Source of the DNA: Guillardia theta CCMP2712
Taxonomy: Eukaryota > Protista > Cryptophyta
Length of the DNA: 64,000 bases
Assembly (NCBI RefSeq): GCF_000315625.1
Contig: NW_005434616.1
Coordinates: 434,437 to 498,436 of the forward strand
Reading direction: 5' to 3'
The notes beneath the pieces are model-generated. The model saw only the letters and a program-made list of their open reading frames with translations, ran no database searches and was not told where the DNA came from. Positions within the stretch are counted from its first letter, which is position 1; every line of letters begins with the position of its first letter. The position numbers and the translations under genes were made by a program. Positions 52,131 to 56,822 of the stretch are shown in pieces.

Positions 52131-52634
52131 AACTTTCGCTCACGAGTATCTCCGATGATATATCTCAGTTCCTTCAGGATACTTTGGCCCTACTTGGACT
52201 TGTGCATATTTTACTGCCTCAAATTGTACAACAATAGCGAGCTGAGGTGAGCTCGAGCTCTATGCGATGGGACCCAACCATGGCCAGGTGTTGAGTAGGG
52301 CAGACGAAGATGAGGGAAGAGCTGGGGAGAAGCCGAACAAGGGTCGAGAAGCGTAGAAAGAAAAGATATGAGGACTGAGAAATGAAAGATGAGATGTGAA
52401 GATGATGAACGGGGAACTAAAACAAAACGATGACAGTAAGATTGTATGGAGGTCTTTGCGAGAGGGGATTGAGAGGAGAAGTTAGCGTTGAGCAAATATA
52501 ATTTTGAGAAGGTCACAGCATGTGGACACATCTGAAGATTGAAGGGAACTATCTGATTGTTGATGAAGAGAAGGAAGTTCTGGCATGTGGAAGCAACATG
52601 AAATGATTCGGTTTTCTTGGCCAGGTTCTTGGAA

Positions 52635-54396
52635 ATGAGCAACCAGATCAAGAAAGTTGGGGTGATCGGAGGAGGAATTGGCGGAATGGCGCTTGCTGCT
52701 GCTCTAGTACGGAAGGGGATCGACGTCTCTGTGTATGAGAGAGATGCGGCAATGGAGTCGAGAAGTCAAGGCTATGGGCTTACCATGCAGCAAGGGGGCA
52801 AAGCCCTCAAGGAGCTCGGGATCACAATGAAAGGCATTAGCTCAATCTGCCACTACTCTCTCCTACCAGACGGAGAAGTCATCGGATGGTATGGGCGACA
52901 ATGGCGGAGCGCGGAAGGGAGCAGGAAAGAAGAGCTTTGTTGGAAATGCAAGGGCACGACGTGGAAGCCGCAGAAAAACAAGGACGCTAAGGCAGGGAAG
53001 CCCAAGACAACGTGTACGGTTTGTGCGGGCACGGGAAGGATGAATGCAGAAACCATTTACAATGTACATATTCCTCGTCAACAACTTCGCGCTGAGTTGT
53101 TCGCTCAGTTGCCTGCTGGGGTTGTGAAGTGGGGGCATCAATTCGTGAGGTTCGAAGAGGATTCAACCCAGGGAGACGTCATTATTCATTTCGGCAATGA
53201 TGTCCCTTCTGATCGCGTTTCAATCTTGGTGGCAGCTGATGGAATATATTCAGGTGTTAAGATGCAGATACTACAAGAATTCCTGGACAAGTCTAACAAT
53301 GACAACACACGCATTGACGAACTCGCAGACATCCTCTCGTCTCATCCGCGAGATGATCTCATTAGCACCCCCCCAGCGAGATGCATCTCAGTGAGAGATT
53401 TTGAAGACAAAGCTTCTCAGCACTATCTGATGCCATTGAAGGTGATAGTAATCTTGGGCATTACCAACGTACATCACCCTCTCTTGAAGCAAAGAGTCTT
53501 TCAAACCTTGAATGGAGAGACTCGCATCTACGTTATGCCTTTCTGTGAAGGAAATCCTTATGAGACTATGTGGCAGCTCTCGTTCCCATACCCCCAAAGT
53601 TCCGACGGCTCAGAGCCCACAGACTTGTCTCCTTCCAGCTTGAAGCGCATGGCGCTGGAGCGCTGTAAAGACTGGCATAGGCCAATACCAGAGCTGATTG
53701 AGAGCACGAAGCTCGAGGGGTTGACGGGTTACCCAGCCTTCGACGCGGATCTCCGCCTCCTCCAGCACACGCTGCGCCAGCTCCGAGATCGTCGTTCGAG
53801 GGTCACCCTGCTCGGAGATGCAGCTCATCCCATGTCACCCTTCAAAGGTCAGGGGGCCAACCAAGCTCTTCTTGACGCTGTCAGCTTGGCTCGCTTCTTG
53901 TCTCTGAGCGACTGGGCCGGAAAGAGGGAGGGAGATGGAAACGGAGAAGGCTGTGGGAAACGAGACCTGCACGACTACTTGAAGGGTTGTGGGAGGGCCT
54001 CCATGTGCTTGTCGGACGCATTGGGCTCCTATGAGGAAGAGATGATGCAGAGGAGCAGGAAGAAGGTCAGCATCTGCTGCTCGGCCTTCGCCTCACTCGT
54101 CACAGGTCGTCGCCTCTCGCGATGCTGCCAGGGTTTTGCATTCGCCTGCCGCTTGCGCCAAGTGAGATGAATTCTGAAATGATAGAGCTGACGGAGCTGT
54201 ACAGGACTAATTGCGTGAGGGCGAGTGCTGCTCTTGCTGCAGAAGGGTTCGAAAACGATCCAGAGGTTACTTGGATGGAATGGCATGTGAATGAAGTGAC
54301 TTGATGCTTTACAAGGGACTTGCTAAAAGAACAGCGATTACAGAAGAAGAGCTCTTGCTGGCACGAGACGAGATCAGAAGACTGATATCACAGTAA
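52635..54396 (+). CDS. FAD-dependent monooxygenase (FAD_binding_3) with inserted CxxCxG zinc finger
   Basis: GGGIGG Rossmann motif, LVAADG and LLGDAAHPMSPFKGQGANQA; short 3' exons inferred (…LHSPAACAK|TNCVRASAA…). Confidence 0.88.
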
Positions 54397-54414
54397 TGAA
54401 TGTCTACCTTTGAA

Positions 54415-56822
54415 CTACTTCATGCGTTGTCCTCGGAGGAGTTTCGGTGAACCTACAAAGCCAATAAGAATAGCAGACGCTGACGCACTAGCAAATTCCT
54501 TCCAACTTCCAGTATCATAGTTGATCTCCAGCAAGATGCTCTCAATCTTTCCATCCAGCCTCTCCGATCGCAGCCTGCTCCATCATGATTTTGTGCTCGA
54601 GTAAGCGAGGCGAATCTCTCACGTAAAGCTGAGAAGCGGCGGCTGATCAGGGAACGGATTGACTCGCACGCCGCGGATGAAATCAATGATCGCACGCTTA
54701 GCCCCCTGACATAGGTCCGCCTGTCAGAAGAATCTTCCATCTCCACTCCTCGTCTTCCCAGCCCTGAATCCTCCAGCTCCTTCTCCCTCTCCTCATCATC
54801 AAATGCAAAAAGATCATTCGCAAGTTCGCGCCCTCTGCTAATATTCTACGCTGCAGTTCAAATGCCGTCACCTCGTTCAAGTGTCGAGAGGTTTCGACGA
54901 GCTCGATCAGGCCAGGGACAGTTTTGAGCTGGATTTCTGTTAGACGTTTTGCATATCATGCGATTCATGTACTTGTTTCTTCCATAGCGCTACGCTCTCT
55001 CCCGGAGGAGCAGCAGGAGGATTATCAGCTGGAGCACTAATTAGTATGCTGCGTTGTCTCACATGCAATGAGCTACTCGCAGGGGCGTCAGAAAAGCTCT
55101 CAGGCTTAGAAGCTGATCCGCTATCTTCTGCTGCGATCCTCTCAGATTTCCTCTCCCTCATCCTCTTATTCCTCCTCCAGACATGACCTTCTTTGGCAAG
55201 AGCTTGCTCCGCTAAGTGTATCTCGTCAAACACAAGACCAAGGGTGTTTGCATTAGCTCACCACCGGCACTTGCTGCATCATTCACTCTGTGCTTCTTTT
55301 GCTTCCCTCCCTCCTCCTCGTTTTGATTTTTCTTGCCCCTAGATCGCTTGCCTGAAGGAGCCTTCCACAAAAGACTCAGTCGCGAGCCTCGTCGAAAGAG
55401 CATTCACATACTTGAGCCTCATCGGTTGTCTTGTCGTTTTCTTCATCGACTTCTTCCACGAGGACTTGCCTGCACTCATACACATCACAAGGCGATCAGA
55501 CATGTTTCAAGGCAGCACAAAATATCAGTGTGGCGGGGGATGCCAACTGAAGTAGTTCGCTGCGGGGCAGTGAGATGTAGACTTCAGGGGTACTGTTCCT
55601 CAAACCTGTGTTCCTTCCCACCAGTTTGCTTCAGTCCGAGGTCTCGGCGTTATTGCCTTTGGAAACGCCGCATTTTGCCCACTCACGCTGAAACTGTGCT
55701 CTCTTGCCTCGCGATCTTTCCTAAACGACCTGTTTCAAAAATACGAAGGTTTCTTTGCAACACACGATTTACATCTCATCTTTGGTTTGTGGTTTGATGT
55801 CAAAAAGCCCCCTCTTCTTGAATCTTTCATGAAAATTTTCGGGTCTTCGCAGTTCGTCATGGTTCGACCTGATCAGCATTGCAGTCCTCACCTCAAACAA
55901 TGAGAAGTGTCTATGCAAGAGACTTTCCAGTTCTCATCGCTCAGGTCTGACAACAACGTGAGTTCAAGGAACAAATCAAGAGTTGATACCAAGAGCACGA
56001 TTATCGATGCTGAGGAATCGTTTTTGCAACGAGGTGATCCCCTTCAAGCTGTTCTTTGCCTCCGATGTGCTCAACATGTTCGAAAGAGAGGTGCCGATAT
56101 CGTCCATCTGTTTCTTGTCCAACCGAATCCTATTGGCTGAGACTATGTCGCTCATCAGCGTACCCGTGAGCTTCACCTGCTCACTTTCAGCATGCGCGTC
56201 TGATCTCTGCTGCTCATATACCCAATCGTCATCGTCTTTGGCCGCACAGTGCAATACAGCCCTGCACGATAGGATTTACATATAACACGTGATGGACATT
56301 TAGCTGACTTGAATGCATCTTCAAGCTGCTGCAAGTCCTCTCCTTTTCTTGCACCGGTCTGACAGCATGTCATGTGAAGCAGCAATACTTGAGCGTTCGA
56401 ACCATTGCGAGAAGCAATCGTAACTTGACCGGTTGTTCTATCTTCTTCCACTTGCTTTCATCCGCTAACTGTCCAACCTTCGTTAGTGGGGTAACAGCAA
56501 TTTTGTTACGTGCCTGCGTCAGCACTTTCGAATTCAATGCCGAAGAAACTCTATCAGCTGTCAAGAAACAACACCATCAAACCAACCTTCGTGTGGCAAG
56601 AGAGTGGAGAAAGTCTTTATTGAAAGAAAATGAGGAAAAGGTTGAGGATGAAAATGAATGTAATGATAGGTAGAAGGGATGGAGGGGATGAAGGCAAGCA
56701 AGGAGGAGGATTCGCAGAGGGCAAGAAGGAAGAAGGAGAACAGGAAGGAGGAGACGGATCTTGCCTGTCCACGAAGTGCTGACCCTCTCTGCCAGCCACA
56801 CGCTCCAGTCTCGTTCTTCCAT
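54415..56822 (-). CDS. NELFA: Negative elongation factor A (NELF-A/WHSC2) ortholog
   Basis: Spliced N-terminus MEERDWSVWLAERVSTSWTADRVSSALN...KWKKIEQPVKLRLLLAM...VLHCAAKDDDDWV. Spliced C-terminus AKRAIIDFIRGVRVNPFP...LRSE...ILLEINYDTGS. Both match the conserved NELF-A termini. Confidence 0.8.

What the first reader, a model, noticed from the sequence alone, without database searches (positions are those of the whole stretch)
54415..56822. Full-length NELF-A ortholog in an alga, missed by the ORF track
Manual splicing (including a GC-AG first intron at 56558-56764) yields both conserved NELF-A regions. The N-terminus (D-x-x-x-WL...W...VKLRLLL...AAKDDDDWV) parallels human DTGLWLHNKL...WAPPS...VKLKLLL...ASLDSDPWV. 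The C-terminus (KRAIIDFIRGVRVNP...EINYDTG) parallels KALILGFMAGSRENP...EMNYATG. NELF drives Pol II promoter-proximal pausing and is absent from yeasts and land plants. Its presence here suggests NELF-dependent pausing in this lineage. The human sequences were recalled, not aligned computationally.
Basis: partly seen in the sequence, partly recalled or inferred. Interest (0 to 1): 0.75.

Follow-up and report, generated by a model that had tools for sequence, protein, structure and literature searches.

The report
NELF-A homologue gene in Guillardia theta

Summary
A database transcript ORF (P0035, 421 aa) threads codon-exactly onto the minus strand as 19 exons, 56822..54423, with a TGA stop at 54422-54420. 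N- and C-terminal exons lie on one transcript.

P0035's best Pfam hit is NELF-A_N (E 1.6e-4, 22.1 bits, below the 27-bit cut-off). Its only PDB sequence hits are human NELF-A (E 1.8e-5), with both ends matched in order. Both tryptophans that plug into NELF-C are kept (W18, W86). The C-terminal block matches the human "NELF-A CTD" microdomain, but the INTS12-contacting arginine (R453) aligns with E358. NELF-C/D (TH1) is encoded elsewhere in the genome, and a paper lists a NELF-B candidate.

It is not new. Chivu et al. (PMC11482795) include this gene (GUITHDRAFT_112397, an N-truncated 365-aa model) in their "NELF-A-like" set.

- a corrected gene model
- two GC-AG introns and one GA-AG intron
- conservation of the CTD outside animals

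Single exons searched by reference gave nothing.

The parts
54420..56822 (-). Whole coding region of the NELF-A-like gene (19 exons, 421 codons plus TGA stop)
   Evidence: P0035 threads codon-exactly. Transcript contig L004 is 100% identical.
56765..56822 (-). Exon 1 (ATG at 56822; MEERDWSVWLAERVSTSWT); holds W18, the counterpart of human W24
   Evidence: alignment; W24/W89 role from PMC4940160
56558..56764 (-).
   Evidence: Only GC-AG placement is possible. A Geminigera transcript reads across the same junction.
56514..56557 (-). Exon 2
56469..56513 (-). Intron 2, 45 nt, GC-AG, in frame and without a stop (would add ARNKIAVTPLTKVGQ if retained)
56403..56468 (-). Exon 3 (…KWKKIEQPVKLRLLLAM)
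56309..56358 (-). Exon 4 (TGARKGEDLQQLEDAFK)
56222..56261 (-). Exon 5 (AVLHCAAKDDDDW); its last codon, 56222-56224, is W86, the counterpart of human W89
55990..56176 (-). Exon 6 (end of the NELF-A_N match)
55892..55946 (-). Exon 7
55773..55844 (-). Exon 8 (PENFHERFKKRGLFDIKPQTKDEM; missing from the NCBI model, kept in Hanusia phi)
55606..55720 (-). Exon 9
55519..55559 (-). Exon 10
55412..55469 (-). Exon 11 (acidic stretch)
55262..55361 (-). Exon 12 (basic K/R-rich stretch)
55188..55211 (-). Exon 13 (24 nt)
55077..55127 (-). Exon 14
54973..55028 (-). Exon 15 (missing from the NCBI model); the C-terminal module starts here
54872..54928 (-). Exon 16; its last codon, 54872-54874, is E358, which aligns with human R453
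54623..54705 (-). Exon 17 (GAKRAIIDFIRGVRVNPFPDQPPLLSFT)
54499..54574 (-). Exon 18 (…ILLEINYDTGSWK)
54453..54498 (-). Intron 18, 46 nt, non-canonical GA-AG
   Evidence: No GT/GC-AG placement is possible. Hanusia phi P0002 has the same C-terminus, SWKVHRNSSEDN.
54420..54452 (-). Exon 19 coding part (VHRNSSEDNA) plus TGA stop 54420-54422
54358..54407 (-). GT-AG intron in the 3'UTR
   Evidence: junction 19
56066..56807 (-). Genomic footprint of the NELF-A_N (NELF-C-binding) domain match, residues 6-123
   Evidence: coordinates computed from the exon map
54438..54993 (-). Genomic footprint of the C-terminal microdomain (about residues 333-416), counterpart of the human NELF-A CTD (431-528)
   Evidence: coordinates

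Best explanation
The locus is the Guillardia theta gene for a full-length homologue, and probably the orthologue, of NELF-A. Shown: it is one expressed 19-exon gene. Its product has an N-terminal helical domain that matches the NELF-A N-terminal (NELF-C-binding) domain and keeps both tryptophans that insert into NELF-C in the human structure. Next comes a long, low-confidence, charged middle part, like the 'tentacle'. It ends in a small ordered module of three helices and three strands that matches the human NELF-A C-terminal domain. Inferred: the N-domain pairs with the Guillardia NELF-C/D (TH1) protein, and through it with the NELF-B candidate, to form a NELF core on early-elongating Pol II, and the tethered C-terminal module contacts a further partner. 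In humans that partner is the INTS12 PHD finger, bound through R453. Here the aligned residue is glutamate, so the same lock-and-key contact is doubtful.
For: Gene structure and expression. Pfam top hit NELF-A_N, E 1.6e-4, covering profile 2-119/146. The N-truncated orthologue P0002 gives no such hit, so the recovered N-terminal exons are what bring the match within detection. Human NELF-A is the only PDB sequence hit for P0035 (E 1.8e-5, two collinear stretches), for P0002 (E 0.015) and for the two-species profile A2 (E 3.7e-4). W18 and W86 align with human W24 and W89, the invariant NELF-C-inserting residues (PMC4940160). Nearest language-model clusters carry NELF-A_N: diatom 0.94, apicomplexan 0.91, chordate 'negative elongation factor A' 0.90. 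The C-terminal module is the only confidently folded part (pLDDT 70-78) and aligns with the human CTD, residues 431-528. Partners: TH1 at G000:C43:276708-277208, 55 bits. The paper's files list Guillardia NELF-C/D (TH1 203 bits) and a NELF-B candidate (COBRA1 46 bits). Chivu et al. independently placed this gene in their NELF-A-like set.
Against: The Pfam score of 22.1 bits is below the 27-bit gathering cut-off. Each aligned stretch alone is weak (i-E about 0.5). No single exon hits anything. The six-frame genome search with PF23553 did not pick up the locus. Nothing aligns to human residues 114-412, which hold the Pol II-binding/HDAg-like region. The paper found HDAg only in animals and Capsaspora, and calls the rest 'NELF-A-like' with no firm conclusion on function. 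The structure test failed: the N-domain model has pLDDT about 40 and the fold searches were uninformative. My own COBRA1 search of the genome found nothing. NELF-E is reported only in metazoans. R453 aligns with E358.
Confidence: 0.8

Rival explanations
1. It is a NELF-A-like protein that shares ancestry with NELF-A but does not work in a pausing complex: the 'existing protein of unknown function' from which animal NELF-A arose by gain of the HDAg-like Pol II-binding region.
For: Chivu et al. propose this model and keep Guillardia out of their final NELF-A candidates. Nothing aligns to the human middle region. R453 is not kept. No NELF-E is reported outside metazoans.
Against: Both NELF-C-inserting tryptophans and the whole N-domain are kept. 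NELF-C/D and a NELF-B candidate are encoded in the same genome. That argues for at least an A/C/B assembly.
Confidence: 0.15
2. The resemblance to NELF-A is chance, and the gene is an unrelated cryptophyte-specific protein.
For: Sub-threshold Pfam score. No exon-level hits. Few relatives are retrievable. The exon-6 piece alone attracted spurious hits to bacterial TPR-repeat proteins.
Against: Human NELF-A is the only hit among 177,635 PDB sequences in three separate searches, with two collinear stretches at the two ends. NELF-A_N is the top Pfam hit with near-full coverage. The language-model neighbours agree. A published HMM-based survey agrees.
Confidence: 0.03
3. The N-terminal and C-terminal exons belong to two different genes or transcripts.
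For: The NCBI model starts only at M56. The transcript contig L004 is itself a merge with the convergent neighbour at its 3' end.
Against: One uninterrupted 421-codon ORF spans exons 1-19 on L004, at 100% identity and with minus-strand splice sites throughout. The merge begins only downstream of the stop codon.
Confidence: 0.02

Closest known systems
Human NELF-A (NELFA/WHSC2; PDB 5L3X chain A, 6GML chain U)
   Same: The N-terminal helical domain is collinear with residues 4-113, including W24 and W89. Then comes a long disordered charged linker. The C-terminal module is collinear with residues 413-516 (…ILGFMAGSRENP…EMNYATGQW against …IIDFIRGVRVNP…EINYDTGSW).
   Different: It is shorter (421 against 528 aa). 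No detectable counterpart of the HDAg-like/Pol II-binding region was found. R453, the INTS12 PHD 'key', aligns with E358. Overall identity is low, and the Pfam score is below the cut-off.
'NELF-A-like' proteins of unicellular eukaryotes in Chivu et al. 2024 (PMC11482795), including GUITHDRAFT_112397 itself and those of Geminigera, Chroomonas, Baffinella and Cryptomonas
   Same: It is the same gene. The Geminigera transcript shares …DADWSQFIGERLSEPWMADR…KLRLLLAV…DDDDEWV….
   Different: The paper used the N-truncated, mis-spliced 365-aa NCBI model. The transcript-supported 421-aa product adds 55 N-terminal residues (with W18), exons 8 and 15, and a different C-terminal tail.
Apicomplexan proteins annotated as NELF-A (Plasmodium, Cryptosporidium, Babesia)
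   Same: [quoted passage not shown]
   Different: Those are described as truncated and lacking the tentacle. The Guillardia protein has a long linker and the conserved C-terminal module.
NELF-A CTD microdomain that binds the INTS12 PHD finger (Blears et al., bioRxiv 10.64898/2026.06.30.735463)
   Same: It is a small ordered domain at the distal end of a flexible tether, with clear sequence similarity. Integrator subunit INTS3 is encoded in this genome.
   Different: The key arginine is not conserved in the alignment. No INTS12 candidate was identified here. The preprint shows conservation only among human, Xenopus and Drosophila.

Membership tests
NELF-A | N-terminal NELF-A_N domain (Pfam PF23553) | tested here: inconclusive
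   It is the top Pfam hit of P0035: E 1.6e-4, 22.1 bits, residues 6-123 matched to profile 2-119/146, but below the 27-bit curated cut-off. Single exons and the N-truncated orthologue give no hit.
NELF-A | Significant whole-protein similarity to an experimentally defined NELF-A, collinear at both ends | tested here: met
   phmmer against all PDB sequences hits only human NELF-A, E 1.8e-5, 27.1 bits, with 1-110 matched to 4-113 and 315-411 matched to 413-516. The A2 profile gives E 3.7e-4.
NELF-A | Invariant tryptophans W24 and W89 that insert into NELF-C pockets (PMC4940160) | tested here: met
   W18 and W86 occupy these alignment columns. Their role is described in the paper.
NELF-A | HDAg-like / Pol II-binding region (PROSITE PS51838; human residues about 89-248) | not testable with these tools
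   No PROSITE profile is available here. phmmer aligns nothing to human residues 114-412. Chivu et al. predict HDAg only in animals and Capsaspora.
NELF-A | C-terminal ordered microdomain (CTD, human 431-528) at the end of the tentacle | tested here: met
   Aligned. It is the only confidently folded part of the AF2 model (pLDDT 70-78, H-H-H-E-E-E). Defined.
NELF-A | CTD arginine (R453) that enters the INTS12 PHD pocket | tested here: not met
   Human R453 aligns with E358 (E also in Hanusia phi), with no gap between it and the conserved NP motif. R354 lies four residues upstream.
NELF complex | Partner subunit NELF-C/D (TH1, PF04858) encoded in the same genome | tested here: met
   G000:C43:276708-276965, 55.1 bits, E 1.9e-13, plus a neighbouring exon. 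The paper lists XP_005830940.1 with TH1 at 203 bits.
NELF complex | Partner subunit NELF-B (COBRA1, PF06209) encoded in the same genome | tested here: inconclusive
   My six-frame search found no candidate, but that search also missed this NELF-A locus. The paper's file lists Guillardia P015370 with COBRA1 at 46.0 bits, E 3.9e-12.
NELF complex | NELF-E subunit | not tested
   The paper reports it only in metazoans. I did not search for it here.
NELF complex | Physical assembly with NELF-C/D and NELF-B, and stabilisation of paused Pol II | not testable with these tools
   Needs biochemistry or PRO-seq.

The most novel reading that the evidence does not exclude
The complete NELF-A architecture was already present in the common ancestor of cryptophytes and animals, close to the root of eukaryotes. 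That architecture is an N-domain with both NELF-C-inserting tryptophans, a flexible tentacle, and the C-terminal microdomain described in 2026 as the INTS12-binding CTD. NELF-A would then not be a recently derived subunit. The CTD's ancestral contact would not depend on the R453 'key', since the alga has glutamate there.
Probability: 0.45. Interest if true: 0.5.

Novelty: already known. Interest (0 to 1): 0.3.

Why it matters
NELF is usually presented as a metazoan pausing factor. [quoted passage not shown] The corrected Guillardia gene model shows that a distant alga keeps both ends of NELF-A: the NELF-C-binding domain with its two anchoring tryptophans, and the C-terminal microdomain that was only recently given a function in human cells. 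That gives a concrete target for testing whether a three-subunit NELF acts on Pol II outside animals. It also shows that the CTD is older than its known INTS12 contact residue. The existence of the homologue is already in the literature, so the gain is a refinement, not a discovery.

Tried and rejected
- Exon-by-exon searches by reference gave no relevant hit: Pfam and PDB sequences.
- Six-frame genome search with PF23553 missed this locus. Its only match (C63, E 0.57) lies in a beta-adaptin-like gene and is chance.
- The COBRA1 genome search returned no candidates.
- The exhaustive phmmer run with the exon-6 ORF piece returned two Hanusia phi gene models. The other 32 hits match one short stretch several times; the two I fetched are bacterial TPR-repeat proteins, so I rejected these hits as spurious.
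- The word-indexed database searches found only P0035, P0002 and P0036, so no deep alignment could be built.
- AlphaFold2 on the 4-row alignment gave mean pLDDT 39.9. Foldseek had no match at E<=0.001. VIA-align gave only generic helical matches at Z about 8, which is the tool's stated background level. The structural test of the N-domain is therefore inconclusive.
- The C-terminal module could not be folded or searched alone, because it has no single reference (it spans exons 15-19).
The spliced protein I used is the database entry P0035.
- The separate-transcripts idea was rejected.

Full report
**What is at the locus**

The window is G000:C58:434437-498436 of an 87.1-Mb, 669-contig genome. 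The NCBI name attached to the local gene model identifies it as Guillardia theta CCMP2712. The minus strand between 54400 and 56850 carries many short open segments in changing frames, which is what a eukaryotic gene with small exons looks like.

**Exon-level tests**

Pfam gave nothing relevant. phmmer against all PDB chain sequences, which include human NELF-A, gave nothing at E<=10 for four pieces. A six-frame search of the whole genome with Pfam NELF-A_N (PF23553) did not pick up this locus. Its one weak match (E 0.57) lies in a beta-adaptin-like gene. Short exons therefore have no power here.

**Finding the spliced product in databases**

They turned out to be from Hanusia phi (P0001, P0002). 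It also returned 32 long proteins that match one short stretch several times. The two I fetched are bacterial TPR-repeat proteins, so I rejected these hits as spurious. Searching with P0002 returned two more entries:
- P0036, which is NCBI 'hypothetical protein GUITHDRAFT_112397', 365 aa
- P0035, a 421-aa MMETSP/JGI transcript ORF marked complete

**Gene structure**

P0035 threads codon-exactly on the window as 19 exons, 56822..54423, followed by TGA at 54422-54420. Its 2884-nt contig L004 is 100% identical to the window in every block.
- Introns are mostly 43-60 nt.
- Junction 2 (56513..56469) is also GC-AG.
- Junction 18 (54498..54453) has no canonical placement and reads GA-AG.
- Hanusia phi has the same C-terminal tail after that junction.
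- An in-frame stop lies four codons upstream of the ATG.
- The NCBI model starts at M56, skips exons 1-3, 8 and 15, and reads through introns.

The N- and C-terminal conserved regions are therefore on one transcript.

**Family tests on the spliced product**

- Pfam: the best hit is NELF-A_N, E 1.6e-4, 22.1 bits, residues 6-123 on profile positions 2-119 of 146. That is below the 27-bit cut-off.
- Against 177,635 distinct PDB sequences the only hits are human NELF-A chains: E 1.8e-5, with residues 1-110 on human 4-113 and 315-411 on human 413-516.
- P0002 alone (E 0.015) and a two-species profile (E 3.7e-4) give the same exclusive result.
- In the alignment, W18 and W86 occupy the columns of human W24 and W89. 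The NELF-AC crystal-structure paper describes these two as invariant tryptophans that insert into NELF-C pockets (PMC4940160).
- The nearest clusters in the ESM Atlas feature search carry NELF-A_N: diatoms 0.94, apicomplexans 0.91, chordate 'negative elongation factor A' 0.90.

**Structure**

AlphaFold2 on the shallow 4-row alignment gave mean pLDDT 39.9. The helical N-domain is not confidently modelled. Foldseek and VIA-align returned only background-level matches, so the fold test of the N-domain is inconclusive. The only confident part is residues about 343-415 (pLDDT 70-78), which form three helices followed by three strands.

**The C-terminal module**

A 2026 preprint (10.64898/2026.06.30.735463) defines a previously unrecognised ~10 kDa 'NELF-A CTD' (human 431-528) at the tip of the tentacle. 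It binds the INTS12 PHD finger through R453. The preprint shows its conservation only among human, Xenopus and Drosophila. The Guillardia module aligns with this CTD. Human R453 falls on E358 (also E in Hanusia), with no gap before the conserved NP motif. INTS3 is clearly encoded in the genome (443 bits), and INTS2 gives only a sub-threshold exon hit. Integrator parts therefore exist here, but the specific arginine contact is doubtful.

**Partner subunits**

TH1 (NELF-C/D) hits G000:C43:276708-277208 strongly. My COBRA1 search found nothing. The supplement of Chivu et al. lists a Guillardia NELF-B candidate (COBRA1 46 bits) and NELF-C/D XP_005830940.1 (TH1 203 bits), as well as HEXIM-like, Spt4, Spt5 and Paf1 entries.

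**Comparison with what is known**

Chivu et al. [quoted passage not shown] Their file FinalNELFAlike_renamed.fasta contains this very gene (XP_005828670.1, GUITHDRAFT_112397) together with other cryptophyte sequences. It is absent from their final NELF-A candidates, and they draw no firm conclusion about its function. The Geminigera transcript in that file reads across the exon 1/2 junction in the same way. The homologue is therefore already on record.

- the full-length gene model
- the two anchoring tryptophans
- conservation of the CTD outside animals, with R453 replaced
- three non-GT introns in one gene

**Mechanism**

Shown: gene structure, expression, domain-level similarity and the presence of partner genes. 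Inferred: the N-domain heterodimerises with NELF-C/D, which bridges to NELF-B, and the resulting core sits on early-elongating Pol II with Spt4/5. The tethered CTD would engage another factor. Whether this produces promoter-proximal pausing in cryptophytes is untested.

**Verdict**

Interest is low to moderate.

Noticed in passing
window 54453-54498 (minus strand): The last coding intron of the gene can only be placed as GA-AG. The transcript contig is 100% identical on both sides, and Hanusia phi has the same post-junction tail. The NCBI model reads through it, presumably because no canonical site exists.
   Followed up: partly
window 56469-56513 and 56558-56764 (minus strand): Two GC-AG introns sit in the same gene. 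The 45-nt one is in frame and has no stop, so retaining it would add 15 residues without breaking the ORF.
   Followed up: partly
window 52617-54413 (plus strand) and L004:1273-2883: The convergent FAD-monooxygenase-like gene has plus-strand GT-AG introns at 54066..54105, 54162..54204 and 54266..54315. The 517-aa ORF from the ORF listing is therefore not its true C-terminus. The transcript contig merges the two convergent genes, whose 3' ends overlap around 54314-54357.
   Followed up: partly
window 54358-54407 (minus strand): A 50-nt GT-AG intron lies in the 3'UTR of the NELF-A-like gene, downstream of the stop codon.
   Followed up: no
G000:C12:822138-823376 (L005): A single open frame matches the Integrator subunit 3 N-terminal domain (Ints3_N) at 443 bits, E 1.9e-131. 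INTS2 gives only a sub-threshold exon hit at G000:C42:290085-290183.
   Followed up: no
G000:C43:276708-277208 (L002, L003): Exons of the Guillardia NELF-C/D (TH1) gene, at 55 and 23 bits.
   Followed up: no
window 55979-56260 (minus strand), residues 53-91 of the piece: The stretch …SLKGITSLQKRFLSIDNRAL… attracts repeated matches to bacterial TPR-repeat proteins in an exhaustive phmmer search (E down to 7e-19 by summed repeats). This shows how repeat proteins can inflate scores for a short helical query.
   Followed up: yes
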